Positions 6,066 to 34,035 of a stretch of DNA of 64,000 bases are shown one piece after another (position 1 is the first letter of the stretch; each line of letters starts with the position of its first letter). This DNA is from Macrostomum lignano (taxonomy: Eukaryota): NCBI GenBank assembly GCA_002269645.1, contig NIVC01003266.1, positions 44,170-108,169 of the forward strand, given 5' to 3'. The notes under the pieces were generated by a model that had not been told where the DNA came from, ran no database searches, and worked only from the letters and a program-made list of their open reading frames with translations. Made by a program: the position numbers and the translations under genes.

Positions 6066-9000
6066 TTAGTCATTATAAATATGCCAAAAAATGTATATTA
6101 TTGTCATTATAAATAATACTAGTAATAACATTATTATTATTATTATGGCATAATTAATTTTATTAATATAAGCTATTTGGGGATAACATTTTTTTGTTTT
6201 TCCATTTACTTTATGTTCAATACCTTCTTTGTCAATAACATTAAGTCTGTTTTGCACTTCTTTTGCTAAGCCAGCAACATCGTTATTGAATGGGTAGTCG
6301 TCAATACAGAGTACATCATAAAGTGCCATCAGCAACCGGCTGCCGTCCTTCTCCTGCCATCGGCTGGCATAGCCTCTCTGGCTGCTGTAGATCACCGAGC
6401 AATTGTGCCGCAGCTTCAGTGGCAGTGAGGCTCCGTCTTCAGGTCCAGAGTCGAGCGCTGGGTACTTTTGCATCTCATAATGCTCTTCGGTGCCTCGGCA
6501 AGCGTGGTAAACTGTCAGAACGTCGTTCGCTGTACTTGACAATGGTCCTAACAGCTCTCTCAATTGGATATGCTCTGTTTGCTCTGTTCCAGTTGAAAAT
6601 CCATTTCTGTTCCCATGCGATGAAATGAACAGAAAAAAATCAAAACATTTTGTCTGATATTTATTCGTGATGTTCTCTTTAATGACGTCAAGAAGGTCTT
6701 GCTTCGAACCATTCTTTTTTTGGTACTGGATGAGCTTAGTACAACCAAGTATCTCGGCTACATCTCGGATGTTATCGCGGTCAGCGTCGTAGCCATCATG
6801 TAGCGTATCATTTCTGTTGTTGTTGTTGGTGATGTTGCTGTTGTTGTTGCTGCTATTGTTGTTGTTGTTGTTGGGATTCTCAAATTTAATTACGATGGAC
6901 ACCGCAATTCTTTCTTTTCTTAATACTGAAATGAAAAGCGCAATTAAAAAAAAACTTTTAGCTGCCTGTTATTCAAAATTACAATGTAAAATTCCTAAGG
7001 CATTCAGACATTTAAGTACCACTTACTTTGACCTGTTTCCGGGATCTTTGGCGATAAATAAATCTCTATTACGGTGGGCTCCGCAGTGCTTTGTTTTTCT
7101 CTCGATGCTGAAATGAAAAACGCAATGTGGAAAAGCATTATAGCTATCTGTCACTGAAAATCAAAATGTTTCTGACAACTCAGATAGTTACATTTGGTTT
7201 CCTGAAATCTTAGATCCCCACTCCTTACATCCCAGATCCCCACTCCTCACATCCCAGATCCCCGCTCCTCACATCCCAGATCCCGCTCCTTACATCCCAG
7301 ATCCCCGCTCCTCACATCCCAGATCCCCGCTCCTCACATCCCAGATCCCCGCTCCTCACATCCCAGATCCCCGCTCCTCACATCCCAAATCCCCACTCCT
7401 TACATCCCAGATCCCTTACTCCTCACATCCCAGATCCCCACTCCTTACATCCCAGATCCCTTACTCCTCACATCCCAGATCCCCGCTCCTCACATCCCAG
7501 ATCCCTTACTCCTCACATCCCAGATCCCTTACTCCACATCCCAGATCCCCGCTCCTCACATCCCAGATCCCCGCTCCTCACATCTTAGATTCCCGCTCCT
7601 CACATCCCAGATCCCGCTCCTTACATCCCAGATCCCGCTCCTAACATCCCAGATCCCCGCTCCTCACATCCCAGATCCCCGCTCCTCACATCCCAAATCC
7701 CCACTCCTCACATCCCAGATCCCCACTCCTTACATCCCAGATCCCTTACTCCTTACATCCCAGATCCCTTACTCCTCACATCCCAGATCCCCGCTCCTCA
7801 CATCCCAGATCCCTTACTCCTCACATCCCAGATCCCTTACTCCACATCCCAGATCCCCGCTCCTCACATCCCAGATCCCTTACTCCTCACATCCCAGATC
7901 CCTTACTCCACATCCCAGATCCCCGCTCCTCACATCCCAGATCCCCGCTCCTCACATCCCAGATTCCCGCTCCTCACATCCCAGATCCCCGCTCCTCACA
8001 TCCCAGATCCCTTACTCCACATCCCAGATCCCCGCTCCTCACATCCCAGATCCCGCTCCTTACATCCCAGATCCCCGCTCCTAACATCCCAGATCCCCGC
8101 TCCTCACATCCCAGATCTCCGCTCCTCACATCCCAGATCCCCGCTCCTCACATCCCAGATCTCCGCTCCTCACATCCCAGATCCCCGCTCCTCACATCCC
8201 AGATCCCCGCTCCTCACATCCCAAATCCCCACTTTTAGCTTGCGATTGTAGATCGTACTGTTAATTGTAAAATTCCGAAGGCATTCATACATTTAAGTGT
8301 CACTTACTTTGACCCGCTTCCGGAATATTTGGCAGCTGATGATCATCCTCGAGTTGTGGTTCTCCTTTGTACTCATTGTCAAACAGAAATCCGCTGTGGA
8401 ATTTAGAGTTCAGATGGGATTCAATCTCTATTTTGCACACTATTAGCAGTTTTGCTATCAGAACTGCGTGCTACATGTATCAGATACCAAAGGAGATTCG
8501 CCGGAAGGCAGCAACGCAGGCACACGGAGGGGGCGACTTAAATGATTTTTGTTTGAGAAGGTGCGCAACAAAAAGTTGACCCGTCTTCTTGAATTTCGTG
8601 TGCCTGCGTTGCTCCGCTCATTCGAAACCATAAGCTTCGTCGCTGCATTTGGGGCACTGTGCACGAAGGCGCGACGAATGTTTCTTACATTCTTAGAACT
8701 GACGTCTCACCCAAAATGAGACCCACTTTCATTATATAATTATTCTGCGCAGTCTTCTCAGTATTTCCTTACAAACTGCATGCCCTGCTTACGAGGGGAT
8801 GCTCTTATTAACTCTAAAAATTACAAAAACGAAGTTGAATGGCCTATAAATTTTCTAGAAAGTTTAGCGCTCCAAATCTTCCTATTTCAATTGGGCCTTA
8901 AAAAATAAAATAAAGTAGACTTTCACGGATAGGCTACAATAAAGTCTTGAAAATTCCCATGTTTCCTACTATACTCATGCAGCTTCAGCAGCAAATGATT

Positions 9001-9316
9001 CTCCCCATCAGAAGTACTCACGCCACATCCGTTGTCTTCTGTTGCTCATTGTGCCCAGTAGCATCCAGTTCGGCTCGCTGCTCTTCTAGCGATCGAACCG
9101 ACCCGTCATTCACGGGGTCACTAAACGCTACTGTTTCTGGCACTTGCAGCAATTTCTCGCGATTTCTCGCACTGTCAGCAGTTAATTGAGATGACTGTGC
9201 GTCGGCGCAATTGTACAACGCCAACACCTCGCTGCTAGCCTCGCCCTTTAAAGTTTAAATCATAATAAGAGTGTAGCCATATAGGAATTTGTTTGGGTTT
9301 GCTCGGAATTGCTCAT
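6066..9316 (-). CDS. Caspase-like (peptidase C14) gene, paralog 1, HACRG type; first exon frame-disrupted
   Basis: Catalytic exon 6925-6066 has IAVSIVI, FLFISSHG, VYHACRG and GYASRWQEKDGSRLL. Upstream exons 7107-7027, 8393-8308 and one ending at 9022 are phase-compatible. The ATG at 9316 matches paralog 2 but hits a stop after 18 codons. Confidence 0.8.
7213..8230. repeat. 22-bp minisatellite (ctcacatcccagatccccgctc) in a caspase-1 intron
   Basis: About 45 tandem units with minor variants. Confidence 0.97.
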
Positions 9317-9339
9317 AACGAAAAGGAGGTTTAAAGCGA

Positions 9340-9607
9340 AGATCTGGGATGCCAGGAGCTTAAAGTGGGATCTGGGATGCCAGCAGCTTAGAGTGGGAAT
9401 CTAGGATTCCAGGAGCTTCAAGTAGGGATCTGGGATGCCAGGAGCTTAAAGTGGGGATCTGGGATGCCAGGAGCTTAAAGAGGGGATCTGGTAGGCCAGG
9501 AGCTTAAAGAGGGGATCTGGTAGGCCAGGAGCTTAAAGAGGGGATCTGGTAGGCCAGGAGCTTAAAGTGGGGATCTGGGATGTCAGGAGCCTCAAGTGAG
9601 GATCTGG
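9340..9607. repeat. 28-29-bp minisatellite (reverse complement of aagctcctgacatcccagatccccacttt)
   Basis: About 9 units; same core as the 22-bp array and the 25630-26305 array. Confidence 0.93.
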
Positions 9608-9649
9608 CAGTGTGCGAAATCGGCAGGCTGCAGCCAAGCCGGCACTCAC

Positions 9650-12099
9650 GGATCCGCTGATGGGGGTGTACAGCAGGCAGTCGTTCCCGCCGGGCACCAG
9701 GCTGGTCTTCCGCAGGCTGCTCAGCGCCTCGCCCACGTGGAAGGTGCACTCGGCCACGCACTTCTGGCTGGAGCTGCCCAGCAGGCCGCCCCTGTCAAAC
9801 AGGGAGCCGCGCGCCGAGCCCAGGTCGCCAACATCGTCGGCGTCGTCTTCGACAGCGTCGGGCGGCAGGCGGAGGACGCAGATGTTGCCGAACTTGTCGC
9901 CGACAGCAACACTGAACTGGTCCAGCATGGCCAGGCAGGTCACCCAGCGGGGCAGCGAATCGTCAGCGAACACCAGCAGCTGGTTGTCCGAGGCTCGGTA
10001 GCGCATCCAGAAGACCGACTCCTGCCGGCGAGGGGTTTCGAGATTACTTGGTTATAGTGTTTTCGATACATATCGGCTTACTAAAAAAGTGGGAAACTAA
10101 AACTCCTTAATCAAATTGTTTTCGATACATATCGGCTTATGTATAACAACAGAAAGACGTTGGCAGATTAGGATTGTACACATATTAATCAAATATTTTA
10201 ATGTAACGATAAAACAGGAAATTCAACTCTTATTAGCTACTCATATTTATTCAGCATATACTTGGAGTTTTATGGAATAATTTGCTACGGAACGCAAGAA
10301 ATGAACTAATATTACAAAGCTCAGACTGTGCTAAAATTTCTCACCTGCACATCGGCAGCGACCACGCGATCGCCGAAAGCCGCCACGGACACAATATAGT
10401 TAGGCAGGGCTTTGGTCTCGCATTTGCGCAGCATTTTCTGCTTGCCCAAATCGTAGATTCGCAGCACGCGACTGACTGAGACCAGGACGCGACCCTGCGG
10501 GAATTATTCATTATTGTTTACAGAACTGCTTTGAGAATGGTGTCACTAGAGGTATAGGCAACCGCCATGTCCCTAATGGGAAAAATCTCCCACAAATCCC
10601 AACACAGGTAAAAATCTCCCACAAATCTCAATACAGGTAGAAATCTCCCACAAATCTCAATACAGGTAGAAATCTCCCACAAATCTCAATACAGGTAGAA
10701 ATCTCCCACAAATCTCAATACAGGTAGAAATCTCCCACAAATCCCAACACAGACAGAAATCTCCCACAAATCCCAACACAGGTAAAAATCTCCCACAAAT
10801 CCCAACACAGGTAAAAATCTCCCACAAATCCCAACACAGGTAAAAATCTCCCACAAATCTCAATACAGGTAGAAATCTCCCATAAATCCCAACACAGACA
10901 GATATCTGCCACAAATCCCAATACAGGTAAAAATCTGCCATAAATCCCAACACAGGCAGAAATCTCCCACAAATCCCAACACAGGCAGAAATCTCCCACA
11001 CATCCCAAGACAGGCAGAAATCTCCCACAAATCTCAAGACAGGCAGAAATCTCCCACAAATCCCAACACAGGCAGAAATCTCCCACACATCCCAAGACAG
11101 GCAGAAATCTCCCACAAATCCCATTCCAACAGACAGAAATCTCCCACAAATCCCATTCCAACAGACAGAAATCTCCCACAAATCCCAACACAGTTAGAAA
11201 TCTCCCTCAAATTCTCCTCCTCCCCTTTCCCAGAAATCTCTCAAAACTTCTCCTCCCCTCTCCCAGAAATCTCCCCAACACAGGTACAATTCGTAACCAG
11301 GTAGATAAAAGCGGTCGTGCACCTGAAAGGGGCACATAGCCTGAGGCGCGTCCTCCACAGCGGTCTCGTGCAGGAAGTCCAACCGTTCGAGAGCCCCAAC
11401 AACCCGATAGGTTCGCAGGACGGCGCCGCCAACGGACCTGGGCGCCAGGGTCATGTCCTTGACAATGCCAACTAGCAGGTAGGATTCCATGGGGTTGCAG
11501 GCGAACCGGCACAGGCAGATGCTGAGCGCTGCTTCATTCTGCTGCAGCCGGATAATCTGAGCAGTCTGGCCAGTGAGCGGTCGCATCACGCGGATCACGG
11601 AGGCCCACATGCCGGCGCCGGGCTTGGGCGCACCGAACACTGGCTCGGGCAGGTTCTCGCTGAGGAAGGCGGCGGCCATCTCCCTGACGAGCTGGGCGTC
11701 ACCAGATCGGTCACCGTCGGCTCCGGCCTGCTCAAGCATCTCCTGAGCAATCTGGCGCTTCTTCTGCTGCTTGCTGTCCTCAGTGAAGGCGTTGTGCTCA
11801 GTCTCGATGAGCACGGCTTGGCCGCTCTCGTGTAGCAGCAGGCGGCGCGGCGTGTACTGCAGGGGGAAGGTCACCTGCGGGCGGGGAGGGGGACACGGTA
11901 TGGTCAGCGGGTTGGATTTGAACTGGCGCCAAATGCTGCGGTCACACGTTGCTTGTATTTTAAGAAAGGCAGTGCTGGCTCACTAAAATTGTATAGTGCT
12001 TCTTCGTAAAGCCGATTTGTCTAACTGCCTACCTGCCTGACTGTGTCTGTCTGCCTGTCTGCCTAAGTGTCTGTCTGTTTGTCTGTCTGTCTGCCTAAG

Positions 12100-12148
<49 letters not shown>

Positions 12149-12181
12149 GATTCTGTCTGTCTGTCTGTCTGTCTGTCTGTG

Positions 12182-12224
<43 letters not shown>

Positions 12225-12417
12225 GTCTGTCTGTGTCTGTCTGTCTGTCTGCCTAAGTGTCTGTCTGTGTCCGTCCGTCTGTCTGCCTGTCTGTCTGTCT
12301 GTCTGTGTCTGTCTGTCTGTCTGCCTAAGTGTCTGTCTGTTTGTCTGTCTGTCTGCCTAAGTGTCTGTCTGTGTGTCTGTCTGTCTGTCTGCCTGTCTGT
12401 CTGTCTGTCTGTCTGCC

Positions 12418-12496
<79 letters not shown>

Positions 12497-12539
12497 TTCT
12501 GTCTGTCTGTCTGCCTGTCTGCCTGTTTGTGTCTGTCTT

Positions 12540-12574
<35 letters not shown>

Positions 12575-12617
12575 GCCTAAGTGTCTGTCTGTGTGTCTGT
12601 GTGTCTGTCTGTCTGTG

Positions 12618-12648
<31 letters not shown>

Positions 12649-12701
12649 GTCTGTCTGTCTGTCTGTCTGTCTGTGTCTGTCTGTCTGTTTGTCTGTCTGC
12701 C

Positions 12702-12756
<55 letters not shown>

Positions 12757-12767
12757 GTGTCTGTCTT

Positions 12768-12856
<89 letters not shown>

Positions 12857-12887
12857 TTCTGTCTGTCTGTCTGTCTGCTGTGTGTCA

Positions 12888-12957
<70 letters not shown>

Positions 12958-14770
12958 GTGTCTGTCTGTCTACCTGCCTGTCTGTCTGTCTGTCTGCCTG
13001 TCTGTCTGTCTATTGCAGCAGCAGCAAAACACAATAAACGCAAACCTGATTAAACACGGTGCCGAGTTTCTCCAGGCTGAGAATCCGCAAAGTGCTGGCA
13101 CTTATTGCCACAATGCCTTCCAGGCACTGCTCAGACGAGAAGCCGGACGCGAACTCCAGACTACCGTAGGACAGCGGAGTCAGGTGGAAGCGGCTCTGGT
13201 AGGTGTAATAAAGCCAAGATCGCGAGGAGATGGCGAGCACAGCTTCCGAGCCTTGGACGAACACTCGGAACAGTTTCACTGGCCGGCTGCCCAGGTACCT
13301 GGTGCGGGTGTCGGACAGGTCTCCAGTCACCGGGTCGATCAGAGCCCGAAGCAGCACCCCATTCTGCAGCCCGATGTTCAGGTAGTGCGTGCCGGCGCTC
13401 CAGCCCACGTCGCCTCCGCCACTGGCGCCGCCGGGAGCGTCCGGAGCGGCGCCTGATTGGAGAATTAATGTGAAGGGAATTATTTTTATACTACTGACAT
13501 GGTTCTGTTGTAAGTAGTAACAGGCAGTCTGTAGAGGCATAAGAGATAAAGCGAAAATCACTTTTCTCGCTAGACAAAAATCGAAATCATGAGCTGAAGA
13601 AACTCAGTAGTAGATAAACCAGAAACTCAGCAGTAGATAAACCAGAAACTCAGCAGTAGATAAACCAGAAACTCAGCAGTAGATAAACCAGAAACTCAGC
13701 ACTAGATAAACTAGAAACTCAGCACTAGATAAACCAAAAACTCAGCACTAGATAAACCAGAAACTCAGCAGAAGATAAACCAGAAGCTCAGCACTAGATA
13801 AACCAGAAACTCAGCAGTAGATAAACCAGAAACTCAGCACTAGATAAACCAGAAACTCAGCACTAGATGAACCAGAAACTCAGCAATAAATAAACCAGAA
13901 ACTCAGCACTAGATAAACCAGAAACTCAGTAGTAGATAAACCAGAAACTCAGCAGTAGATAAACCAGAAACTCAGCAGTAGATAAACCAGAAACTCAGCA
14001 GCAGATAAACCAGAAACTCAGCACTAGATAAACCAGAAACTCAGTAGTAGATAAACCATAAACTCAGCAGTAGATAAACCAGAAACTCAGCACTAGATAA
14101 ACCAGAATCTCAGCGCTAGATAAACCAGAAACTCAGCATTAGATAAACCAGAAACTCAGCATTAGATAAACCAGAAACTCAGCATTAGATAAACCAGAAA
14201 CTCAGCAGTAGATAAACCAGAAACTCAGCACTAGATAAACCAGAAACTCAGCAGTAGATAAACCAGAAGCTCAGCACTAGATAAACCAGAAACTCAGCAC
14301 TAGATAAACCAGAAACTCAGCGCTAGATAAACCAGAAACTCAGCATTAGATAAACCAGAAACTCAGCATTAGATAAACCAGAAACTCAGCAGTAGATAAA
14401 CCAGAAACTCAGCATCAGATAAACCAGAAACTCAGCACCAGACAAATCCCAGAGACCAACCTGACAAAGTAGATCCCAGCTGAGCCAGGCACAGAGACTC
14501 GGGTGGAGCCGGCAGCGCCTGCAGGCTGAGCGGCGCCAAGCAGTCCGCAGGGTCCAAGCTGACGATCCGGACGGTGTTGTCCGACAGTCCCACGGCGAGA
14601 AACCGGCAGCGCTGCTCACCGGGCGGCACCCGGCCAAGAGCCATGCAGACCACATCTGCAGACATGTCCTTCCGCTCAGTGTACTCGTTCAGCTGGCCGG
14701 CCGCGTCCATCTCGAAGTACACCAGCTCGCCGCCGGCCAGGGCGATGGCCACCTGGCGTTGGTTGACGTT
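9650..14770 (-). CDS. SF3B3: Splicing factor SF3B3 (SAP130) gene fragment, 5 exons, about 591 open codons, N- and C-terminal exons not found in the window
   Basis: Exons ~14770/14752-14461, 13452-13046, 11874-11323, 10494-10345 and 10021-9650 splice in frame. They encode [34 protein letters not shown]...[39 protein letters not shown] and [11 protein letters not shown]...GDKFGNI, all characteristic of SF3B3. Confidence 0.95.
10581..11190. repeat. 29-bp minisatellite (aaaaatctcccacaaatcccaacacaggt) in an SF3B3 intron
   Basis: About 21 units. Confidence 0.96.
12025..13010. repeat. (CTGT)n microsatellite in an SF3B3 intron
   Basis: About 1 kb of ctgt with gcctaagtgt interruptions; source of the SVCL ORFs. 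Confidence 0.98.
13595..14430. repeat. 23-bp minisatellite (agataaaccagaaactcagcagt) in an SF3B3 intron
   Basis: About 36 units; period 23 measured (13612 to 13635). Confidence 0.97.
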
Positions 14771-15561: not shown

Positions 15562-18500
15562 CAGTGGCGGATCCAGGGGGAGGGCGGGGAGGGCGGCCGC
15601 CCCCCCACTTTTGCCTTGGCTGGACTTGTACAAAATGGAGGTATTTTAATTTTGGGCTTAATTTGAATTTGAACCAACGCAAAAAGTTTCACTTCTATTC
15701 TACAATATTTTCATTGCTTCTATCGCTCTATGGGTCTGTCTGTCTGCAGCGAGTCTGCTTTTTCTTGGAATGTAATAAAATTACATCGAAAGTAGAAGTG
15801 CTTTCCAACTGGAACAGCAATTCACGAGCAGCAGTTAGTCTTAGTCAGTGCAGGAATTAGCTATTAAGTGTTTTACAGGTGTTACAGTGTACATTCAGTG
15901 CAGACACCTATTATAAGGAAGGCCTAGCCTTGGGATAAGACAGGGGCACTGGGGCAGGGTCGGTAAATAAAATAAAGTAGAGCGGCTTAGTGGCTCAGTC
16001 CCTTAGTGTGAAAAAAACGCTTTTGTCCTCCCTTATTTGGGGTTCAGACTTCAATATTTCTGAGCAATGTACATTTCGAAAACTAAGTGACTGAACTAGA
16101 AGTAAGAAGTAAGAATTTAGGGGAGGAGAGTGGGGTGGGGACTCCTCTGGGCACAGAAGCCCAAAAAGTTAATTGAGCTTTGGCCCTGGGCATACGAGTA
16201 AGCATAAATAAAAGCAAGGGTACATAGGAATTTAAATGCACAAGAGACAAGATCGTGACAAGGAATTGATACGGATTGAAGGATCAATACAAAATCACAA
16301 AGAATGAGGCGAGCATCTTCACCATTACAGCATGACGCAAAAGAGACAGAAATTGCTGACGCATTTTTTGCTACCCCATCTGGTCCTGCTACTAGTTCTG
16401 CCACAGCCGAGATACCAATTTCTTCCTCTGCAGCTACTTATACTGAGGTACATGTACCTACGAATTCTTCTGCCGCTGCTTCGGAACTGCAATTTGCTGA
16501 TACTTTTAATTCAGACCAAGCTGAAGCCAGTCCCTCTGAAAGCAATGCTAATCTTAATGGAGTTACCAGAGAAGCGGATGAGGTACAAGTGAGCAAGTTG
16601 TCTGACTTTGACATAGGTCTATTTGACCCTGCTGCTGCTGCTGACAGTGCCACTAAGTTAGCTTTCTTGACGCAAACGTGGGAGCCCCCTAGTACTTACC
16701 CAATGCCATTTGAAGAGCGAAAAACAAAGGGAAAAATCGAAAAGAGATTCTTAAGGCACAGTCATCTAACCGAAAAACCCTGGTTAGCATATTCACATGT
16801 GAAGAGTGGCTTGTTCTGCAAAGTTTGTGTGCTATTTGGTACTCAGCAAGGACAACAAGGTCACCTATTGGGAAGACTAGTGCATGAGCCATTGCAAAAG
16901 TACGCAAGACTCTTGGGAGCCAATGGCTATCTCTGTGCTCATGAGCATACAAACAACCACAAAGACAATGTACTAAGGGCGCAAGAGTTCAAAAGCGAAT
17001 GGTGCCAGAGCAACATATTGATAGTCGATTTGCTACACAGAGGCAGGAGCAGATTGCAAAGAACAGGCATATCCTCAGCTCCATTGTGCGTGCCATTCTA
17101 GTCTGTGCAATGAGTGGAACTGCTCTTAGGGGACACCGAGATGATCATAGTGTGCTAGAGACTGCCGACCGACCAGGCCAGAATGATGGTCTCTTTCGAG
17201 AGATCCTGCGAGCGATGGTGGACACAGGAGATAAGAGGCTAGAGGAGCATCTGCGCTCTGGACCGAGTAACGCAAAATATACTAGCAAGACAATTCAGAA
17301 TGAGCTGATTGAGTGCATCGGAGAAGTGATTCTGGACCGCCTGAAGGAGCGGATAAACAGTGCACAGTTTGTGTCCATCCTGGCTGATAAAACAACAGAT
17401 CAGGCCACAAAGGAGCAATTGACAGTATGTGTTCGCTATGTGTTTGATGGAGCAATTTTCGAAGACTTTCTGGGATTCGCCATTGCAGAGGACATGACTG
17501 GAGTTGGACTTGCGTTTGCGAGGACATTCTGTCCCAGTTCGTCACACTCGGTATTCCCTTAGAAGGGCGGCTGGTTGGATTGGGATTTGATGGCGCCAGT
17601 GCAATGAGCGGCAAGTTCAAGGGAGCTCAAGCAATTATCCGAGAGAAACATCCTATCGCCATCTATATTCATTGTGCTGCGCATCAACTCAATCTGGTCA
17701 TCAGCAAGAGCAGCGAAGTCCCTGGAATCAGAAATGCGTGGGGAAACATCCAAGAGCTGGCAAAGTTCTTCAACAGTTCTGCCCAGAGAGTGAAGTGTCT
17801 GGAGGACATAGTGAAGTCAGAGAACCAACAGGCCAATACCCGTCGAGTGAAGAACTTATGCGATACTCGCTGGATTGAAAGACATGATGCGGTTCTAACA
17901 AGACATTTGCTGATACCAATGACGCAAGCTCTTGAAGAAATTCGTGAACATTCCAACCCAGAAGCATCCAGGAATGCAAAAGCTCTGCTTAATTCAATGG
18001 ACGCAGAGTTTCTGGTATCAGTTGTGGTTCTGGATGCAACATTGACTCTCACCAAGGGATTGGCAGAAGCACTCCAGAAGAGCGCAATTGATTTGCTCAG
18101 TGCCAGGACTCTAATTGCGGATGTGCAAGAGCAACTGCAGAAGTGGCGAGAAGAGTCTGCAGAGAAGTTTGGTGAGCTCTGGGAGAAGATTCTTGAGACT
18201 GCAAAGGCAATTGAAATCGATGTCACTCCTCCTAGGCGGGTTGCACGTCAGAAGAATCGTGCCAATATTCCTACTACTGATACGAAGGACTACTGGCGTT
18301 TGGTCATCTTTGTTCCCTTCTTGAATGGACTACTGGTCAATCTGCAAGACCGATTTTCCCGCCTTTCTGACGTTGCTGCTGGACTCAGTGCCCTTATCCC
18401 AGCAACAGCCAAAAAGCATGTAAGTCCATTCATTCAGCTCAAGCCATCAGTGCAGCACTTTGCTTTAGTTCTACCAAGCCAGGAGGAAGAGGAGGTTGAA

Positions 18501-19797
18501 GCAGAATTTAACCAGTGGATGCGACTTTGGCAAAGGGAGGACCCACAGAAATGGCCCACAACTTTGACTAAGACCATCTTGGAGTGCGACCATAACCTGT
18601 TTCCCAACGTCAGCGCCCTCTTGAACATTTATGCAACATTGCCTGTCTCCACTGCCACTGGAGAAAGATCTTTCTCTTTGCTGAAATTCTTAAAGAATTA
18701 CTTGCGCAGCACAATGGGAGAAGAGCAGTTGAATGGACTCGCATTGGCCTTCATCCACAGGGACATGATTTGTGATACCGCAGGCACAATATCTGCTACT
18801 ATTGAGAAGTTTCTGTCAAAGGATGTCAATCGCCGGGCCTGCTTCAACTACTAATTGCTTTAGGGCAGTGACTGAAACTGACATAGTGTCCAATCATTTT
18901 ATTTGAATATTCATTCAATTTAATATATGTAAATTCAAAAGTTATAGTTGAAAATTGTGTATTACATACGAGCTATATACTCAGCAACATTGAAAAGTCG
19001 CCACTATATGCGCAAGTGAGCAATTTCCCTTGGACTATTCTGAAAAGAGAAAATGGATCGGGGTAGCTTTAAATTAATCCATCCAATCCTCACACACCAC
19101 TCCTCCCCACTTCATTCCTCTCAACTCAAGTCTGCCATGGTGTAGCTACGAGCTAAGTTGCATCACTCGCAAAGATTTAGAGACTTTACCTTCACTCAAA
19201 AGTGGCGATCATAGATGGAATCTTCTACATGTATGATGGTGACTTTTCAATGTTGCTGATTGTCTTCTAGACAGACACTAGATAGTATAGCTCATATGTA
19301 TAATGTATTGTTTTTATGTTGCTTCAGTTCCTGCTCCAGTTTGCTTTCATCCCTGCATGCATGCATCATACTTGTACAAACAAGTAGTTGTAATAATGTG
19401 TTAAAATTTAAATGCTGCTTTTGACACAACAAACTGCTAATGCCCATTTGCAATGCCAATTGTGTTGCCTCATTATATTCGAATATGATTGAATCAACAA
19501 TAACAATAAGTGTCAGCAGGGAAAGCATCCAATAAGTGACTTAAAATCCACTCCTCTACTAAAAAGCTGCTTATTAACTTTCTCATTTTTTAATGCTCTT
19601 CCACACTGCATGTAATGATAAAAATATAAATGAAATTTAGTGATTCAAACAAAATTAAACTTTTGCAATCAATTGAACTGAAATAGCTAAAAATCTTTTT
19701 TGTATATGAACAAAATATTACTTTTTTTCTAGTTTCAGTTTTGGTTTCAGTATCCAAAAATCCACCCCCTACTTTAAAAATCCTAGATCCGCCACTG
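15562..19797 (+). mobile_element. Full-length hAT DNA transposon (Tip100/ZMYM1-PRKRIR-like), 4236 bp
   Basis: TIRs cagtggcggatc(c/t)ag at 15562 and its reverse complement ending at 19797. Perfect 8-bp TSD GTTAGGGT at 15554-15561 and 19798-19805. Internal transposase. Confidence 0.95.
16304..18854 (+). pseudogene. hAT transposase split into three frames by two frameshifts (about 16995 and 17515)
   Basis: WLAYSHVKSGLFCKVC zinc-finger-like segment; ALRGHRD...NAKYTSKTIQNELI...SILADKTTD (DUF4371-like); GFDGASAMSG, YIHCAAHQLNL, CDTRWIER; and hATC-like ATLPVSTATGERSFSLLKFLKNYLRSTMGEEQLNGLAL. Confidence 0.9.
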
Positions 19798-25629: not shown

Positions 25630-26305
25630 GCTCCTGGCATCCCAGATCCCCACTTTAAGCTTCTGGCTTAATATATATCTATATTAAAGATATCCCCACT
25701 TTAAGCTCATGGCATCCCAGAGATCCCCACTTCAAGCTCCTGTCATCCCAGATCCGCACTTTAAGCTCCTGACATCCCAGATCCGCACTTTAAGCTCCTG
25801 GTATCCCAGATCCCCACTTTTATCTCCTGTCATCCCAGATCCCCACTTTTATCTACTGACATCCCAGATCCCCACTTTAAGCTCCTGGCATCCCAGATCC
25901 CCACTTTTATCTCCTGACATCCCAGATCCGCACTTTAAGCTCCTGACATCCCAGATCCCCACTTTTATCTCCTGACATCCCAGATCCACACTTTAAGCTC
26001 CTGACATCCCAGATCCACACTTTAAGCTCCTGACATCCCAGATCCCCACTTTTATCTCCTGACATCCCAGATCCCCACTCTAAGCTCCTGACATCCCAGA
26101 TCCCCACTCTAAGCTCCTGACATCCCAGATCCCCACTCTAAGCTCCTGACATCCCAGATCCCCACTTTAAGCTCCTGACATCCCAGATCCCCACTTTTAT
26201 CTCCTGACATCCCAGATCCCCACTTTAAGCTCCTGACATCCCAGATCCCCACTTTAAGCTCCTGACATCCCAGATCCGCACTTTAAGCTCCTGACATCCC
26301 AGATG
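25630..26305. repeat. 29-bp minisatellite (aagctcctgacatcccagatccccacttt)
   Basis: About 22 units, inverted relative to the 9340-9607 array. Confidence 0.96.
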
Positions 26306-26707
26306 TCAGGAACTTGCAGCAATGCTAGCGCTCGCATTCAAACTGACAGGCGTTTTTTTACTCAATTTCTAGGAATGAGCAGCTAATCGATATTAAGTAC
26401 TGGTGCTGAGTATGCTGTGGCTTATTTATTTTTCTAATCAGTTTAAGTATGGACAACCAGCTGCCTTAGCGATGTGCAGCAATTATGTGCAGGCAGAAAA
26501 GAAGCAGAAATAACACGACTTTGATTTTTCCTGAGATGTTGCAATCTCTCTGGCATCAACTTTCTTTTATGCCATCACCATGAGAACACACAAATCAAGT
26601 TTAATTTTTCCAATAGATTGACACTTTATTAATTTTCTTACAATAATAATTAATTTTATTTCATACAGTATTATTAATATTAATAATATTAGTCATTAGT
26701 CCTTATA

Positions 26708-29679
26708 CTATTGTATATTATTGTCATTATTAATGGCACTCGTAACAATATTATTGTTATTAGCATTATTAATTTTATCAGTATAAGCTATTTGGGGGTA
26801 ACACTTTTTTATTATTCCATTAAATTCATGATCAATTCCATATCCATCAATATAATTCAGCCTTTTTTGGATTTTTTGAGCTAAGCCAGCAATACTCGTA
26901 TTGTTATTGAATAATCGGTAGCCGTAAAAACAGAGTACATACCGCACGGCCCTCAGCAACCGGCTGCCGTCCTTCTCCTGCCATCGGCTGACGTAGCCGC
27001 TCTGGCTGCTGTAGATCACCGAGCAGTTGAGCCGCAGCTTCAGTGGCAGTGAGGCTCCGTCTCCACCTTCACCGTCTCCATCGTCTCCAGAGTCGAGCGC
27101 TGGGTCCTCTTGCTTCACGAAATGCTCTTTGGTGCCTCGACAAGCATGGTAAAATGTCAGAACCTCGTCTGCTGCCCTTGACAATGGTTCCAACAGCTCC
27201 CTCAATCGGACATGCTCTGTTCCAGTTGAAAATCCATTTCTGTTCCCATGCGATGAAATGAACAGAAATACTCTTGCCACATGTAGCGGACATTTCTCTC
27301 TGATAAACTTGAGCAGTTCTTGCTTCGATCGGTCACCAGGTTTGTACTCCAAGTTGTCAGTACAACCAAGTTTCTCGGCTACTTTTCGGATGTATTCGCG
27401 GTCAGCCTTGTAGCCATGTTCACATTCGGACGTATCGTTTCTGTTGGCATTCTCAATTACGATGGACACCGCAATGCTTGTTTCTGTCGATACTAAATCT
27501 AAAACGCAATTTGAAAAAAGCACGTTTAGCTGCCTGTCATTAAAAATAAAAATGTTTCTGACATCCCAGATGGCCACAGTTGGTTTTCCGAAATCTTGGA
27601 TCCCCGCTCCTCACATCCCAGATACCCGCTCCTCACATCCCAGATCCCCACTCCTCACATCCCAGATCCCCACTCCTTACATCCCAGATCCCCACTCCTT
27701 ACATCCCAGATCCCCACTCCTTACATCCCAGATCCCCGTTCCTCACATCCCAGATCCCGCTCTTCACATTCCAGATCCCGCTCCTCACATCCCAGATCCC
27801 GCTCCTCACATCCCAGATCCCGCTCCTCACATCCCAGATATATCAGCGTTCAAAAAGCTGATATGCTATTACAAACTTATCATAGATATTTAATGTTAGA
27901 CCCACCCATTTGCCTGCACTAAAACAGCCACACAGAACCTGCGTGCCCTCTCTGTGTTAATTCATCTAACTAGCTAACTATGGAAAAAAGCAAATAAGAT
28001 GGGCGGGGCGGAAAAATATCACGCCACCACCTAACACTGCCCCCGAGCACAATGCCGAGCGTTATAAATACTCGTACAATGCAATTGGAAGAGCCGAGAC
28101 TCTCCACTGCCGAGTTTAGTAAAGTTTGAGCTCAAAACTAAGAAAAGGACTTGTCTCAGTTCTTCGAAGCTTCTGTCTGTCGTGGCAGAGGGGTAGCAGG
28201 CGTGTAAGGCTTGAGAGGCCATCAGAGACACCGATAAACGACCTGTTACAAGATACCCGCTCCTCACATCCCATATCCCCACTTTTAGTTTGCGATTGTA
28301 GATCGTATACTGTTCATTGTAAAATTCCTAAGGCATTCATACATTTAAGTGTCACTTACTTTGACCTGCTTCCGGAATATTTAGCGACTGATGATGATCC
28401 TTGACTTGTGATTCTTCTTTGCGCTCTTTGCCAATCAGAAATCCGCTGTAGAATTTAGAGTTCAGATGGGATTCAATCTCTATTTTGCAGACGATTCGCA
28501 GTTTTACAATATCAGAACTACATGTATCAGATTCAAAGCGGGATTCCCAGAAATGTTTTTGCTGCGCCGGAACTGAACGACGCAGGCACACGGCTGGCTG
28601 GCGACTCTTGTTCTTGTTTGAGAAGGTGCGCAACAATAAGTTGGCCTGTGCCTGCGTTGCTTCGCCCAGCGATGCAGAAAAATTGTGAGATTGGATTCCA
28701 CCTATGATAACTATGCTGCAAATTAACTCTGCTGACAGAATTCTCCCAACAAAAAAGTTTTTGCAAAACCTTATCTTAGAGTCAACCTCAAGCTTTAAGT
28801 TGAACATGTATCCCACTTTGCCTGTACGCTTGTCTATGTGGCTAGTGTTTTGCTAGCGGAGATTCTCACTAAGTAACATCCGCTGCCATAGACAATAAAA
28901 TTAACGCTTTGAGCCAGAGTGAGGTTGGTTGAACACTTTCTTCTACCATAGACAAAACGTGTCCCGCAAATACAGGGAGCGGAGAATACTCATAATCTCC
29001 GCGAATCTAGTCAATATTCTCCGCTCCGTGCATTCGTGGAATTAGGATACATTTCAAAAACCAACTAAAACTCTAACAACTGAATCCGAGGATTTGCCTC
29101 GGAGATTCTGCATCGACATTCTCCTCGTTTCAGTAGGTTATTATACATATTCCTACCGCATGAACAATAAGCTTCGTCGCTGGCGTTTGGGGGCATTGGG
29201 CACGAAGGTATGACGAATGCGCTTCCATTTTTAGAACTGACGCTTGCACCCATATGAGACCCACTTTAATTACAAAAAACTTTCTGCATAGTCTTCTCAA
29301 GTTCTCAGTCTCCTCTAACAAACTGCATTCCCTGCTCACAAGGGAACTCTAAAAGTCGCAAACATGAAGTTGAATGGCCCAAAAGATTTTCTAAAAGGTT
29401 TAGACCTCCAAATTTTCCTATTTCAATTGGGCCTTTAAAAATAAAATAAAGTAGACTTTCGAGGGTAGGCTACAAGAAAGTCTCCCCATCAGAAGTAACT
29501 CACGCTACATCCTTTGCCTTCTGTTGCTCATGGTCTTCAATAGCTTCCAGCTCGGCTCGGAGCTCTTCAAGCGATCGAACCACCAATTCCTCGCTGCCGC
29601 CGAAGCGGCCTTTAAAGTTTGAATCGTTATTGAATTTAAGCCTTATAGGAGTTTGTTCGGTTTGCTCAGAGTTACTCAT
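26708..29679 (-). CDS. Caspase-like (peptidase C14) gene, paralog 2, HACRG type, intact, 350 aa, 3 exons
   Basis: Exons 29679-29504, 28445-28360 and 27498-26708 total 1053 nt, open, with GT-AG sites. N-terminal MSNSEQTEQ...RSLEELRAELEAIEDHEQQKAKD; then IAVSIVIEN, FLFISSHG, FYHACRG, PALDSG and GYVSRWQEKDGSRLL. Confidence 0.85.
27598..27838. repeat. 22-bp minisatellite in a caspase-2 intron (same family as 7213-8230)
   Basis: About 11 units at the position equivalent to the longer array in paralog 1. Confidence 0.95.
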
Positions 29680-31496
29680 AAAAAAGGGGTTAAAGTAGAA
29701 TGAACGCCAGTCAGGCCTTTTTATATTGTATGTAGGGTGAGCGCTAAAGCAGTTTCTCTCTGTGCCGTTGTCGTTGTGTTGTTGTGATACCGATGTCGTT
29801 GCCTAACAACGGTACAGAGAAAAACTGTACGCCAGCTTGAGCTGCTTCTACCCAGCTCACTGGAATTGTGCTTACATCGAAGCGAAAAAAGCAACGGCCT
29901 CCTCTCGTCTCGACCGTTGCTATCCAGCCAGTTTTCTTGCTTGACTATAAAATACACTGCCTTGAATAATTTGCGGCACAGAGAGATTTGGAGATGTGAG
30001 CCTCACACTCATAATAGGGCCTTTAGAGGCCGATGTGTTAGAAATTCTTTCTGGCCTGTGGAGCAGATCGAAGGTATCAAGAAAATAAAAACTGTTATAA
30101 TTTTGTCTATGCGTTCTCGTTGACTATAAAATACACTGCCTTGAATATCTTTCAGTACGACGAACTTCGAGATACAGTTTGTGAGCCTCATACTCATAGT
30201 AGGGCCTTTGGCGGCTGGTGTGTCTGAAACTGAAAGTCTACTGTCATTTGTTGAGTCATACAACTTCTAGACTCACTCTGACGTCCTGTGCCCGCGCTTC
30301 CCCGCTCCCCATCAATATACTGAAATATAACAGCGTCCTTTGTCCCCGAATGATATTGATATTATAGAACACCAGATATGGGGATTACGAGCGTAGAAAT
30401 TAACAAAGAATGAGTTGCATAAAAGGTCAAGGTGAAAGAATATTACGCTAGGTGAAAGTTAAAGGCTGAAGCAGAGGCCAAGAAAGGGACAAATTAAAGA
30501 TAACAGCAGAAACATATGTATGGTACTGGTCTGGTGGCCTGACGTGCGAATCGATTGGAAGAAGGAACGTGTCTCAAAAATCTATAAAACAGACACGGGC
30601 CTCGGCCCCCGAAACGGGCGGCACCTTTCGCTTATACTTTGGACTCCATTGTAGTCTACTCAAACCCACGGCTTCCTATTCGTCGTTTGTGCTAAGAGAC
30701 TAATTATAACTAGCAGTGATCTCAATTGTAAGCCTCTGAGGCTCGGCTGCAGAAAGTGAACAACAGAGAGAGCAAAGCAGGAGACCAAGAAGATATGGGT
30801 CTTACACCGGAGGTCGTTGCTTTTTCCGCTCCGATATAATTATAAGCGCTTTTCCAGTTGCTTGTACATAGCGGGCCGAGGCCAGAGCGCTAATAACTGA
30901 AGTGGCTGTCTATCTATGAAGAGGATATACTAAACGCGTGTTAGTATTTAGTTTTTTAACTATACAGTTCATGCAATAATGAGAATTTCATTTCATACTA
31001 CTGATAGTAATCTTTATTTAAGGCAGCCAAGTGGTAAATATAAGAAATTTAAGAAGTAGCCGAAATGAAAATTACATAAAAAAGAATTAGGCAAAGCTTC
31101 ATCAATATGCCAAATTTAGCAACAATGTTTATTTTAGCTCAGACTATCATCAGAGTGCACCGGTTAAAAATAACTCTGACAATGACAAATGTGATACTCG
31201 CAAAAAAAAGAAACAGACTGGTACGGTTTAGCGAGTTGCTATATTTTACCCAAGTATATACACGCAAGAATATTTGACAAACTAAGCATCATATAGACAT
31301 TTATTAAAGTAAATATTACACTTAATAAACAGATTAGATTCGCTGAATAATTCACATGGCGCGTTAAAAAAATTACAAGAGTGCAAACTGAATAAAAACA
31401 TTTTTTTTAAATTGCAATTAAAAAAATGTTAAAAATTTTTATAGAAGAAAAAATTGGCAGTTTTGTTTAAATAAAATGCTCATTAAAGCCGCCCAA

Positions 31497-34035
31497 TCAG
31501 TCCGGTTGACCAGTGCATTCAGGGTTGTTGAGCTCCAGCCGGGCGAGCTTTTCCCTTGCAGCAGTTGTCCCTCTGCCTCCGCCACCCAAGCCAGTCTCGA
31601 TGACGAAGTTCTCAAATCCCTGATTCGCGCTGTACTGCGTCTGCACGTAGGCGGTGTAGGATTTGCCTTTTTGTCGAAGGGGAACGATGCCCAGCTTCAA
31701 GAGTTGATGCAGCTCAGCTTGCAACAAGTCTGCCAGCCTCTTGACAGTGATTCTGCCACGGCGTCTGACAACATTCAGCAGAGCTTGTGGCATCCAGCTG
31801 CCTTCGTCTTCATTCCTGTACGCCTCATAGCCCGCCATGCTGGCGAAGATGGCAGCAGCAGCCTCCATCTCGGGCGGCAGGGTGCAGCCGGCGGCTTTCG
31901 GCGGGCTGACGAATCCCAGGCAGCAAGCAAAGGCCGGTCGGTGATTCTGCCCGGCCTGAGCAGCGTGAAACCGCGGGCCCCGGCACGCCTGATAGAACAG
32001 CAGGACAAAGCCAGCCAGGTTTTCCACTTTCTTCATCAGCTCCTCAACAGAGACAATTTTCCCGTCCGATGTTCGAATCCCAGCCTCGCAGCCGTGAGCA
32101 GAGATGGCGACAAACAGGCAACGAGGCGTGGTCGACTTGTTACGCCATTCCTGAGCGTAATTATCCACAAATTGCAGAGCTTTCTCGGCTGACACGTAGC
32201 CATCGTCAGGGCAGAGAGAGCGCACGTTCTCTGATAAACAGCCGAGCTGCTTCGCAATTTTACGAAAGTTCTTCTTGTCCTTTTCAAAACCAACTCTGTC
32301 TTTTTCTGAGCTGTCTTTTTCGTACTTGCCGATGATAACAGAAACAAAGGCATTCGGCTCCGCCCACTCATAGGAAGGTTTCGAGTTCAGTGCGTCAAGC
32401 TGCTCAAGAGGATTGCCTTGGTCGTCAGACACCGTAGGAATCGGCGGAGCTTCGGCATTCTCGACACTGGCTGCGACCTCAGCTAACTTGCCGCTCGGGA
32501 CGCCTGACATTCGACGTTGGGAACACCTGCAGCAGTTGGCAATCCGGTCAGCCAACCTGTCTGTCGTTACTGACTTGTCCAATGCCTGATGCACATCCTG
32601 CCACTGCCAGTTTGGCTCCCCAAAGTTTGGCTCCCCAAAGTTTGGCTTGAGTAGGTAGTAGATCTCAGCATTGCAGAGCGACGGACATTTCGGAGCTTCA
32701 TCGTCACCGCTACCAGTCTTGCCAACACCCTGTTCGACGCTGTCACTGTCCACTCCGGTGCATTCTGTCGGACAGAGTAAGTAGGTCACTCGAATCTTGA
32801 TAGGTTCCGAGCTCTGTCTCGAATACAGCGGTTTGTTCAGCTCGTCCTCTGTCACAATTTTGCCGCTAAGCATTGGCTGCATGCAGTTGGCAGTGACGTC
32901 AATCTTGTGAACAATTAACGCCTCGCAAGCTTTTTGCGACTTCGCGTCAGACATGAAGTTTTTAACTGTCTGATGGTAGCTCTCCACCGAATCGGCCTTT
33001 TGAGAATCAAATTTAAACCGCCTGTTGCATGATTCTCCGCTTGGAAACTCCACTTGACTACCTGAGTGGTGAGTGTCGAGAAGCAGAACTGGCAGTGTCT
33101 CACGAGTCTCGAATTGCGGCAGCTGCGGACAGCTCTGTTGAATTCTGCTGCATTGATTCTGGTCATTGCCAGACTCTGAAATGAATTGGAAATTATCATA
33201 CAATGGAAGTCTTGCCAATGTTAAAAAATAGAATATCCAGGATGCACTGTAACTTTTTACTTACCTTCAAGTTCGCAGTCTGGCACTGATGGAGGCCCAA
33301 CTGCATCTTCTTTGGATGCAACCGCAGTTGCACTGCTCAGCTTCTCATCTGGCTTCACTCCTGACATTGAATCCTGCAGAGAAGAGAATGACACACTTTC
33401 AGACATTGCTAATCTTGGAATTAACTTAACTTTCTAGGCTTTAGCAGCAGAATTTATACAGTTGTGATCTTGTTTTGCTTTGGTTAGAAAGCTATTTCTA
33501 ATATCGAGCATTTGCTTTATAATTATGTCATTATATAAAACGTACAATGTCTATTTGTATAGCTATATATTTATAGCTATTAGCTATTATTTACAAAGAA
33601 CTAAGTTGTTGTTGCATTATTACCAATGACTCACAACATAATGTGCACATTGATCTATAAATAAGTAATTGTAGTTGCAATGTAATACACTTTTTGGACA
33701 TTGTAGACATAGTTCCTTGTTATATTTATATATTATAATCACCTATCCTCCAGCTCTAGAAATTACTCATGAGCAAAGGTATACAAGGATGTTAATATGT
33801 AGAAGCCAGACTTGATGTATGTATTTTAAGAAAATAATTAGACTACTTAAGAGATGACAATCCACTAAATAATCCCTTTTATCCTTGCATACTTTTATAG
33901 ACAGTATAATAAATCTGGGGTCTAATTTTGGTTAATTTTGTAAACACCTTTTTAAAATGTGTATTTATAACTTACCAATGCTAAATCCGTAGGCAACATC
34001 GGTGCATTCTGGTGATTGTCCTGATTGATACTCAT
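31497..34035 (-). CDS. Caspase-like protein with long N-terminal region, QACRG type, about 615 aa, 3 exons
   Basis: Exons 34035-33976, 33373-33265 and 33175-31497 are phase-compatible. C-terminal domain has AFVSVIIG, DRVGFEKD, LFVAISAHG, LFYQACRG and GYEAYRNEDEGSWMPQAL. The two short upstream exons are inferred from splice signals only. Confidence 0.85.

What the first reader, a model, noticed from the sequence alone, without database searches (positions are those of the whole stretch)
6066..34035. Possible self-contained two-tier caspase cascade encoded as a cluster
Seen: the long-prodomain gene (31497-34035) keeps every canonical S1 residue (DRVG, QACRG, AYRN) but has no Asp in its intersubunit linker (QACRGPRFHAAQ...PPEMEAAA). 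The two short-prodomain HACRG genes have altered S1 residues but share a linker site PALD-SG, like caspase-3 IETD-SG. All three lie on the same strand within 28 kb. Inference: the QACRG protein could act as an initiator that cleaves PALD/SG and activates effectors of different specificity.
Basis: inference. Interest (0 to 1): 0.8.

Follow-up and report, generated by a model that had tools for sequence, protein, structure and literature searches.

The report
Flatworm-specific tandem array of odd caspases

Summary
The window is Macrostomum lignano DNA. Three Peptidase_C14 genes lie on the minus strand. They are c3 (31497-34035), c2 (26708-29709) and c1 (6066-9316).

c3 keeps Arg64, His121, Gln161, Cys163 and Arg207 (caspase-3 numbering) and has no Asp in its linker. 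c1 and c2 read HACRG, have lost all three Asp-binding residues, and carry PALD-SG where caspase-3 has IETD-SG.

Four corrections apply:
- The HACRG genes have about 100 N-terminal residues from two upstream exons, so their prodomain is not short.
- The first exon of c1 is frame-broken.
- An SF3B3-like gene and a hAT transposon lie between c1 and c2.
- The PALDSG codons are identical in c1 and c2, which reflects shared descent or gene conversion, not independent conservation.

All cluster members form one lineage-specific clade, so they are tandem duplicates. Among the three subgenomic copies of the locus, c3 is broken in one and not detected in another. The cluster genes evolve at dN/dS 0.5-1.6, against at most 0.17 for the neighbouring SF3B3.

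The cascade therefore remains possible but unsupported.

One new lead emerged: the c3 "prodomain" looks like a degenerate second caspase domain, not a death fold.

The parts
31497..34035 (-). c3: 615-aa caspase (BOX15_Mlig001330g1), three exons (about 34035-33970, 33373-33266, 33182-31497). It has a canonical dyad and S1 triad.
32385..33176 (-). c3 N-terminal region (P0001 aa about 57-320). It matches no Pfam domain and is probably a degenerate caspase p20-like pseudo-domain. A Cys aligns with the catalytic Cys; the catalytic His position holds Val.
31575..32357 (-). c3 catalytic caspase domain (p20 plus p10), with DRVG, SAHG, QACRG and AYRN
31884..31976 (-). c3 intersubunit linker, 31 residues, with no Asp and no Glu
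26708..29709 (-). c2: intact HACRG caspase paralogue (annotated product 360 aa). CDS exons are 29679-29503, about 28450-28361 and about 27484-26708.
27086..27103 (-). PALDSG in the c2 linker (HACRG lies at 27148-27134)
6066..9316 (-). c1: older HACRG paralogue. Exon-like blocks are 9316-9017, about 8395-8309 and about 6926-6066. Exon 1 is frame-broken: +1 insertions within 9301-9291 and 9249-9239, and a TGA at 9262-9260. A poly-Asn microsatellite insertion starts near 6878, and a 5-nt insertion within 6152-6138 gives a hydrophobic tail. Probably a pseudogene.
6444..6461 (-). PALDSG in the c1 linker, with codons identical to those of c2 (HACRG lies at 6506-6492)
9533..13561 (-). Intervening, unrelated SF3B3/RSE1-like gene exons (CPSF_A and Beta-prop_RSE1_2nd). 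Its orientation relative to the caspases is inverted compared with the two other subgenomic loci.
16304..18854 (+). Intervening hAT-family transposase split over three ORFs

Best explanation
The region holds a Macrostomum-specific tandem array of very divergent caspase paralogues. The array arose by local duplication and was then copied with the three subgenomes of this neopolyploid.

**c3** is a genuine Asp-directed caspase. Its roughly 270-residue N-terminal region is not a death fold. It is most likely a degenerate second caspase-like domain that keeps the Cys and has lost the His. With no Asp in its intersubunit linker, c3 probably works as an uncleaved single chain, with the pseudo-domain acting as a built-in partner or regulator (inferred).

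**c2** is an intact HACRG paralogue. It keeps the dyad, has replaced all three Asp-binding S1 residues, and has LD/SG at the canonical linker position. It is most likely a zymogen cut in trans by some Asp-specific caspase. c3 is one candidate, alongside c4 and the canonical flatworm caspases. c2 itself probably does not cut after Asp in the canonical way (inferred).

**c1** is an older HACRG copy that is probably a pseudogene.

The genes lie together because of their duplication history. That is not evidence for a co-selected module.
For: - **Organism and gene identity:**
- **Caspase family membership:**
- **Active-site and S1 mapping against a verified caspase-3 sequence:**
- **Single clade:** c3, P0003, c4 and the HACRG genes are monophyletic, with 200 of 200 NJ bootstraps against 8 canonical caspases.
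- **Lineage restriction:** an HMM search of 1.84 billion representative proteins gave only 16 hits and no HACRG protein outside M. lignano.
- **Three subgenomic loci with differing content:**. Three subgenomes are reported in PMC10733133.
- **Weak constraint:** pairwise dN/dS is 0.5-1.0 among the HACRG paralogues, 1.6 for c2 versus c2', and 0.47-0.90 for c3 versus c3'. The neighbouring SF3B3 gives 0.06-0.17, and the differences are significant (Fisher p = 1.5e-4 to 2.4e-3).
- **Near-neutral c1-c2 divergence:** their introns (78-81% identical) are as similar as the exon-3 region (about 78% identical for c1 against the c2 homeologue c2'; c1-c2 exon-3 dN/dS 0.99).
- **c1 frame breaks:**
- **Pseudo-caspase prodomain:**
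  - hhalign gives a colinear 139-144-column alignment, scoring 30.6 against 14.3 +/- 2.4 for 200 column shuffles.
  - Reversed controls fall to background.
  - An AF2 model of the prodomain alone shows a beta/alpha order like p20.
  - Its Foldseek hits in the PDB are almost all caspase large subunits, with best E = 1.4e-3, probability 1.00 and TM about 0.40-0.47.
Against: - The pseudo-caspase reading rests on a low-confidence model (mean pLDDT 43).
- An HMM of the cluster caspase domains scores the prodomain no better than 3000 shuffled decoys.
- hhalign against sub-profiles or against canonical caspases is at background.
- The high dN/dS of the HACRG genes could mean decay rather than a new specificity.
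- Both c1 frame breaks are 1-nt insertions in short homopolymer runs, so they could be assembly errors.
- No expression or biochemical data were available.
- The outgroup for the tree is small and was chosen by similarity to the HACRG profile, so long-branch attraction is possible.
Confidence: 0.6

Rival explanations
1. One reading: c3 is the dedicated upstream protease. It cleaves the neighbouring HACRG zymogens at PALD/SG and so switches on effectors of a different specificity. The cluster would be a self-contained two-tier cascade.
For: - c3 has a full Asp-binding S1, and there is no Asp in its own linker.
- The HACRG proteins lack the S1 triad, so self-processing at Asp seems unlikely.
- All four HACRG copies keep D-S-G at the caspase-3-like position.
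- c3 and c2 are adjacent (1.8 kb apart, same strand) in two subgenomic loci.
Against: - The second subgenome has a truncated c3 next to an intact c2, and the third has no c3 next to its HACRG gene.
- c4 and other caspases could cut the site.
- PALD lacks the P3 Glu favoured by most caspases (established knowledge).
- The site is identical at the nucleotide level in c1 and c2 and lies in a low-dS block.
- c1 looks broken.
- No expression data were found.
Confidence: 0.15
2. The HACRG genes are decaying or non-catalytic copies, that is, pseudogenes or cFLIP-like pseudo-enzymes. The LD/SG site and the dyad would then be relics of an ancestral effector-like caspase rather than working parts.
For: - dN/dS is 0.5-1.6, far above the neighbouring gene.
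- The c1-c2 coding sequence is no more conserved than their introns.
- The residue at the R64 position differs in every copy: E, H or P.
- c1 has frame breaks and microsatellite insertions.
- Pfam scores are weak, with E = 1e-5 to 1e-8.
Against: - c2, c2' and P0004 keep long open reading frames across three exons.
- His, Cys, HACRG, LDSG and the block DGASLP..SRWQEKDGSRL are invariant across copies whose flanking synonymous divergence is 0.3-1.2. Low dS in that block, however, points to gene conversion as an alternative cause.
- c2 is annotated as a gene.
Confidence: 0.2
3. The HACRG proteins act as heterodimer partners that tune c3 or c4 activity, as cFLIP tunes caspase-8, rather than as downstream substrates.
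For: - They are tandem paralogues with retained fold elements.
- There is a precedent in the human CASP8-CASP10-CFLAR tandem cluster (established knowledge).
Against: - They keep the catalytic dyad, which cFLIP lost.
- Nothing here tests dimerisation.
- c3 may already carry its own pseudo-domain.
Confidence: 0.05

Closest known systems
Initiator-to-effector caspase activation (caspase-8/-9 cutting procaspase-3 at IETD175/S176)
   Same: - c2 and c1 have an Asp-Ser-Gly in the intersubunit linker. It lies 16 residues after the catalytic Cys, against 12 in caspase-3, and upstream of the invariant Pro.
- c3 has the full Asp-binding triad.
   Different: - c3 has no CARD or DED.
- The putative effectors have about 100-residue N-termini and lack R64, Q161 and R207.
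- All partners belong to one young lineage-specific clade instead of the ancient initiator and effector clades.
- No cleavage has been shown.
Human tandem caspase clusters (CASP8-CASP10-CFLAR at 2q33; CASP1/4/5/12 at 11q22)
   Same: Paralogues made by local duplication lie side by side, and some copies have lost catalytic features. In these human clusters the linkage is a by-product of duplication, although the products interact (established knowledge).
   Different: - Here the divergent copies keep the dyad but change S1.
- The locus is triplicated by polyploidy, with differential loss.
- Interaction among the products is untested.
Pseudo-caspase domains (cFLIP-L C-terminal domain; separase pseudo-protease domain preceding its active caspase-fold domain)
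   Same: A catalytically dead caspase-fold domain sits in cis or in trans with an active one. The c3 N-terminal region gives Foldseek hits almost only to caspase p20 chains and lacks the His.
   Different: - The evidence here is a low-confidence model plus a marginal profile match.
- The domain order and sequence are unrelated to cFLIP or separase.
- A Cys is retained at the catalytic position.
Metacaspases and paracaspases (clan CD enzymes with non-Asp P1 specificity)
   Same: They have the caspase fold and a His-Cys dyad, with an S1 pocket lacking the two Arg residues of caspases.
   Different: - Those families have conserved acidic S1 residues for Arg/Lys. The HACRG copies have E, H or P at the first position, and His and Trp at the others, so no consistent acidic pocket.
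- By sequence they are animal-type caspases, nearest to c4 and c3.

Membership tests
Caspases (MEROPS C14A / Pfam PF00656) | Caspase-hemoglobinase fold recognised by the family profile | tested here: met
   PF00656 matches c3 at E = 2.4e-15, c1 at 1.1e-8 and c2 at 1e-5, all above the gathering score. c3 also matches caspase-2, caspase-1 and caspase-3 chains in the PDB.
Caspases (MEROPS C14A / Pfam PF00656) | Catalytic His-Cys dyad (H121 and C163 in caspase-3 numbering) | tested here: met
   Invariant in c1, c2, c3, c4, P0003 and P0004.
Caspases (MEROPS C14A / Pfam PF00656) | Asp-binding S1 triad R64, Q161 and R207 (R179, Q283 and R341 in caspase-1 numbering) | tested here: not met
   Met in c3 and P0003. 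Not met in c1, c2 or P0004, which have H/E/P, H and W at these positions. The HACRG genes are therefore caspase homologues, but cannot be filed as canonical Asp-specific caspases.
Initiator (apical) caspases | Death-fold recruitment domain (CARD, DED or PYD) in the prodomain | tested here: not met
   No Pfam domain was found in the c3 N-terminus, even at E = 10. Foldseek hits of the prodomain model are caspase p20 chains, not death folds.
Initiator (apical) caspases | Membership of the caspase-2/-9 or caspase-8/-10 clades | tested here: inconclusive
   c3 groups with c4 and the HACRG genes in a lineage-specific clade. The outgroup sample was small and the branches are long.
Effector (executioner) caspases | Short prodomain (about 20-30 residues) | tested here: not met
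   c2, P0005 and P0006 have about 95-105 residues before the first strand of the domain.
Effector (executioner) caspases | Asp cleavage site in the intersubunit linker | tested here: met
   PALD/SG in c1, c2 and P0005, and PVLD/SG in P0004. Actual cleavage was not tested.
Functionally selected gene cluster (cascade encoded as a unit) | Linkage and integrity of all partners kept in related genomes or subgenomes | tested here: not met
   In L001, c3' is deleted and frameshifted next to an intact c2'. In L003 there is no c3 within 10 kb upstream of the HACRG gene, although intergenic homology is present. Other species could not be examined.
Functionally selected gene cluster (cascade encoded as a unit) | Co-expression, and cleavage of one product by the other | not testable with these tools
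   No expression tables naming these genes were found.

The most novel reading that the evidence does not exclude
A two-tier protease module evolved afresh inside one flatworm lineage by local duplication. A single-chain tandem pseudo-caspase/caspase (c3) with canonical Asp specificity would need no linker cleavage. It would cut the neighbouring HACRG zymogens at LD/SG, and these would then cleave after a residue other than Asp. This would be an independent origin of a caspase cascade with a switch of specificity between the tiers.
Probability: 0.12. Interest if true: 0.7.

Novelty: new variant of a known kind. Interest (0 to 1): 0.4.

Why it matters
If the HACRG proteins are active, they would be animal caspases that kept the dyad but abandoned the Asp-binding pocket. 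That would widen the known specificity range of the family.

If the c3 N-terminus is a pseudo-caspase domain, it would add a new prodomain type to the CARD, DED, ankyrin and kinase-like ones listed for lophotrochozoans (PMC11463336). It would also suggest activation without adaptor recruitment.

A cascade built from recent tandem duplicates would show how proteolytic cascades can arise.

As it stands, the locus is mainly an example of a fast-evolving, lineage-specific caspase expansion in a neopolyploid genome.

Tried and rejected
- **AF2 of full-length c3** with a 3-sequence alignment gave pLDDT 35, which is unusable.
- **phmmer of the HACRG protein P0005 against the PDB** gave only noise.
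- **Pfam on the c3 prodomain and on the HACRG N-termini** found nothing credible.
- **Database searches** found relatives only in M. lignano. This held for c3, for c1 and for the prodomain profile. The exhaustive HMM search found no HACRG protein elsewhere. Conservation of PALDSG in orthologues of other species therefore could not be tested.
- **An HMM of the cluster caspase domains against the prodomain** scored no better than shuffled decoys. hhalign against sub-profiles or canonical caspases was at background. The internal-duplication idea is kept only as a moderately supported lead.
- **Literature:** no paper mentions HACRG caspases or Mlig001330. Three papers' supplements held no entry for these genes.
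- **A simple inversion** was considered to explain the different SF3B3 orientation. It was rejected because c1 keeps the orientation of c2, and c4 is absent from the window.


Full report
**What is there**

The window is genomic DNA of the free-living flatworm Macrostomum lignano. The long ORF at 31497-33218 (minus strand) is 100% identical to BOX15_Mlig001330g1. The window corresponds to the last 64 kb of contig NIVC01003266.1.

A tblastn scan with the three proteins finds exactly three caspase-like genes, all on the minus strand. All three pass the Pfam gathering score for Peptidase_C14.

Mapping the database proteins back to the window gives three-exon structures:
- c3: about 34035-33970, 33373-33266 and 33182-31497.
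- c2: 29679-29503, about 28450-28361 and about 27484-26708. It is annotated as a 360-aa product.
- c1: 9316-9017, about 8395-8309 and about 6926-6066.

**Checking the motifs**

I aligned the domains to human caspase-3. The reference sequence was verified against PDB caspase-3 chains.
- c3 and its distant paralogue P0003 keep R64, H121, Q161, C163, R207 and W214.
- The HACRG genes (c1, c2, P0004, P0005) keep H121 and C163.
- In the HACRG genes R64 becomes H, E or P, Q161 becomes H, R207 becomes W with an Arg shifted one position upstream, and W214 becomes R.
- The c3 linker has no Asp and no Glu in 31 residues.
- c1 and c2 have PALDSG 16 residues after the catalytic Cys, upstream of the invariant Pro. 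This matches the position of IETD/SG in caspase-3.

The sequence observation is therefore correct.

**Corrections to the observation**

- The HACRG genes do not have a short prodomain. Two upstream exons add about 100 residues with no recognisable domain.
- c1 is probably not intact.
  - Its ATG (9316) is followed by two 1-nt insertions relative to c2 and c2', and by a TGA at 9262-9260. No in-frame ATG precedes the catalytic Cys.
  - It has a poly-Asn microsatellite insertion in the loop that carries the R64 position.
  - A 5-nt insertion replaces the Asn-rich tail with a 28-residue hydrophobic tail.
  - No protein model matches it.
  - Both exon-1 insertions lie in short homopolymer runs, so assembly error cannot be excluded.
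- The three genes are not contiguous. SF3B3/RSE1-like exons (9533-13561, minus strand) and a hAT transposase (16304-18854, plus strand) lie between c1 and c2.

**Is the shared PALDSG meaningful?**

The 18 nucleotides encoding it are identical in c1 and c2.

Synonymous divergence among the HACRG paralogues is much lower in the central block (FLFISSHG to GSRL) than in the flanks. The counts are 8/69 versus 17/59, 8/70 versus 34/93, and 11/67 versus 32/59, with Fisher p = 0.024, 2.7e-4 and 1.1e-5.

That pattern points to gene conversion or recent shared descent. The identity of the site therefore carries little independent weight. D-S-G is nevertheless present in all four copies, including PVLDSG in P0004.

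**Origin of the cluster**

- A profile of the HACRG proteins, searched against 1.84 billion representative proteins, found only 16 hits below E = 1e-3. The best non-HACRG hits were c4 and P0003 of M. lignano, followed by ordinary caspases of other animals. None of these hits reads HACRG.
- In an NJ tree, c3, P0003, c4 and the HACRG genes form one clade in 200 of 200 bootstraps against eight canonical caspases. The outgroup is small, so this is indicative only.
- The array is thus a lineage-specific expansion by local duplication.

M. lignano has three subgenomes (PMC10733133), and I found three versions of the locus:

| Locus | Gene order |
|---|---|
| Window | homeobox, c3, c2, hAT, SF3B3 (same strand as the caspases), c1 |
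| L001 (NIVC01000482.1) | homeobox, c3', c2', c4, SF3B3 (opposite strand) |
| L003 (NIVC01000172.1) | HACRG (P0004), c4'', SF3B3 (opposite strand) |

- In L001, c3' has lost the roughly 56 codons that include SAHG and is frameshifted, while c2' is intact.
- In L003 the c3-c2 intergenic homology is present, but no c3 is detectable within the 10 kb upstream.
- P0003, the old paralogue of c3, sits alone inside an intron of an IP3-receptor gene.

Linkage and integrity of the proposed pair are therefore not maintained across the subgenomes.

**Selection**

| Comparison | dN/dS |
|---|---|
| c2 vs c2' (between subgenomes) | 1.6 (17 nonsynonymous, 3 synonymous) |
| c3 vs c3' | 0.47-0.90 |
| c4 vs c4'' | 0.76 |
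| Neighbouring SF3B3 exons | 0.06-0.17 |
| Among HACRG paralogues | 0.5-1.0 |

- The cluster genes differ significantly from SF3B3, with Fisher p = 1.5e-4, 2.9e-5 and 2.4e-3.
- The c1 and c2 introns are 78-81% identical. The exon-3 region of c1 is about 78% identical to that of c2', and c1-c2 exon-3 dN/dS is 0.99.
- Over the long term c3 versus P0003 shows constraint, with dN = 0.47 and saturated dS. The prodomain is 38% identical and the caspase domain 53% identical.
- The cluster genes are thus under weak or diversifying selection. This fits young duplicates and cautions against reading every retained motif as functional.

**A new lead: the c3 "prodomain"**

The c3 N-terminal region matches no Pfam domain. 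The evidence that it is caspase-like is as follows.
- A profile-profile comparison of the prodomain (c3, c3', P0003) with the cluster's caspase domains gives a colinear alignment of about 140 columns.
  - GKIVTEDELNKPLY aligns with GKIVSVEELMKKVE.
  - YLLC aligns with YQAC.
  - NWQWQDVHQAL..TTDRLADRI aligns with SWMPQALLNVV..TVKRLADLL.
  - P = 0.0013-0.0025 and the score is 30.6, against 14.3 +/- 2.4 (maximum 24.2) for 200 column shuffles.
  - Reversed controls are at background.
- Modelled alone, the prodomain gives a weak AF2 model (pLDDT 43, pTM 0.50) with a beta/alpha order like p20.
- Foldseek against 350,542 PDB chains returns caspase large subunits in the great majority of the top 50 hits. 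The best has E = 1.4e-3, probability 1.00 and TM 0.40-0.47.

Against this, an HMM of the caspase domains does not score the prodomain above shuffled decoys. Sub-profiles and canonical caspases also give no signal.

I rate a pseudo-caspase domain (Cys kept, His replaced by Val or Thr) as more likely than not, but unproven. If it is right, c3 is not a classical adaptor-recruited initiator.

**Mechanism and verdict**

Shown:
- three caspase homologues;
- a canonical active site in c3;
- a remodelled S1 and a linker Asp-Ser-Gly in the HACRG genes;
- origin by tandem duplication;
- differential decay across the subgenomes;
- weak constraint.

Inferred:
- c3 is Asp-specific and active without linker cleavage;
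- c2 is processed in trans at LD/SG by some Asp-specific caspase and has a non-canonical specificity;
- c1 is a pseudogene.

The specific claim that c3 activates c1 and c2, and that the cluster is a self-contained cascade, is neither supported nor refuted by anything I could compute. The comparative data argue against the cluster being a selected unit.

Flatworm caspases with unusual prodomains have been catalogued, including one kinase-like case in M. lignano (PMC11463336). Neither the HACRG genes nor this prodomain is described there.

Noticed in passing
L001:17173-18285 and L003:18745-19839: A fourth caspase type (c4) lies between the HACRG gene and SF3B3 in both other subgenomic loci but is absent from the window. 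It has QACRG and keeps R64, but has Ser at the R207 position with Arg one residue later. Its linker contains Asp.
   Followed up: partly
window 9533-13561 (minus strand) versus L001:19660-22828 and L003:21080-22274: The SF3B3/RSE1-like gene lies on the same strand as the caspases in the window but on the opposite strand in the other two loci. In the window c1 follows its 3' end. This indicates a rearrangement or a misassembly that a single inversion does not explain.
   Followed up: partly
window 6066-6152: A 5-nt insertion in an (AAT)n tract shifts the c1 tail from Asn-rich to a 28-residue hydrophobic stretch (IIIIIMLLLVLFIMTIIYIFWHIY). The stretch resembles a tail anchor.
   Followed up: no
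window 7212-8230 and 27599-27839; also 9341-9607 and 25692-26304: The same 22-bp minisatellite sits in intron 2 of both c1 (46 copies) and c2 (11 copies). A 29-bp minisatellite flanks both genes and also occurs in L001 and L003.
   Followed up: no
window 16304-18854 (plus strand): A hAT-family transposase (Dimer_Tnp_hAT) is split over three consecutive ORFs. It is probably a degenerate insertion and accounts for part of the wider c1-c2 spacing.
   Followed up: partly
L003:11076-11530 (protein P0004): P0004 carries an internal duplication of the first-strand segment (IAVPILIENANGDD... followed by IAVSIVIENVNGDD...). This suggests unequal crossing-over in this gene family.
   Followed up: no
window 34795-39415 (minus strand): A TALE-class homeobox gene (Homeodomain and Homeobox_KN) lies upstream of c3. 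It is conserved at the same position in L001, and its introns are filled with 18-21-bp minisatellites.
   Followed up: no
window 42484-45904 and 60742-64000: There are two very large tandem arrays. One is a (TCCTG)n-type array of 3.4 kb. The other is a 24-bp array of at least 3.3 kb that runs to the end of the window, which is also the contig end.
   Followed up: no
window 905-2208 (minus strand) and 52438-53691 (minus strand): There are ORFs with replication protein A OB-fold domains (905-1456 and 1777-2208). Another ORF has weak SUEL-lectin and CUB matches (52438-53691). These are other genes in the window, unrelated to the finding.
   Followed up: no
protein P0010 (731 aa, from the representative search): A protein of unknown origin has two complete caspase domains in tandem, reading NACRG in both. 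It is a precedent for tandem caspase-domain architectures.
   Followed up: no
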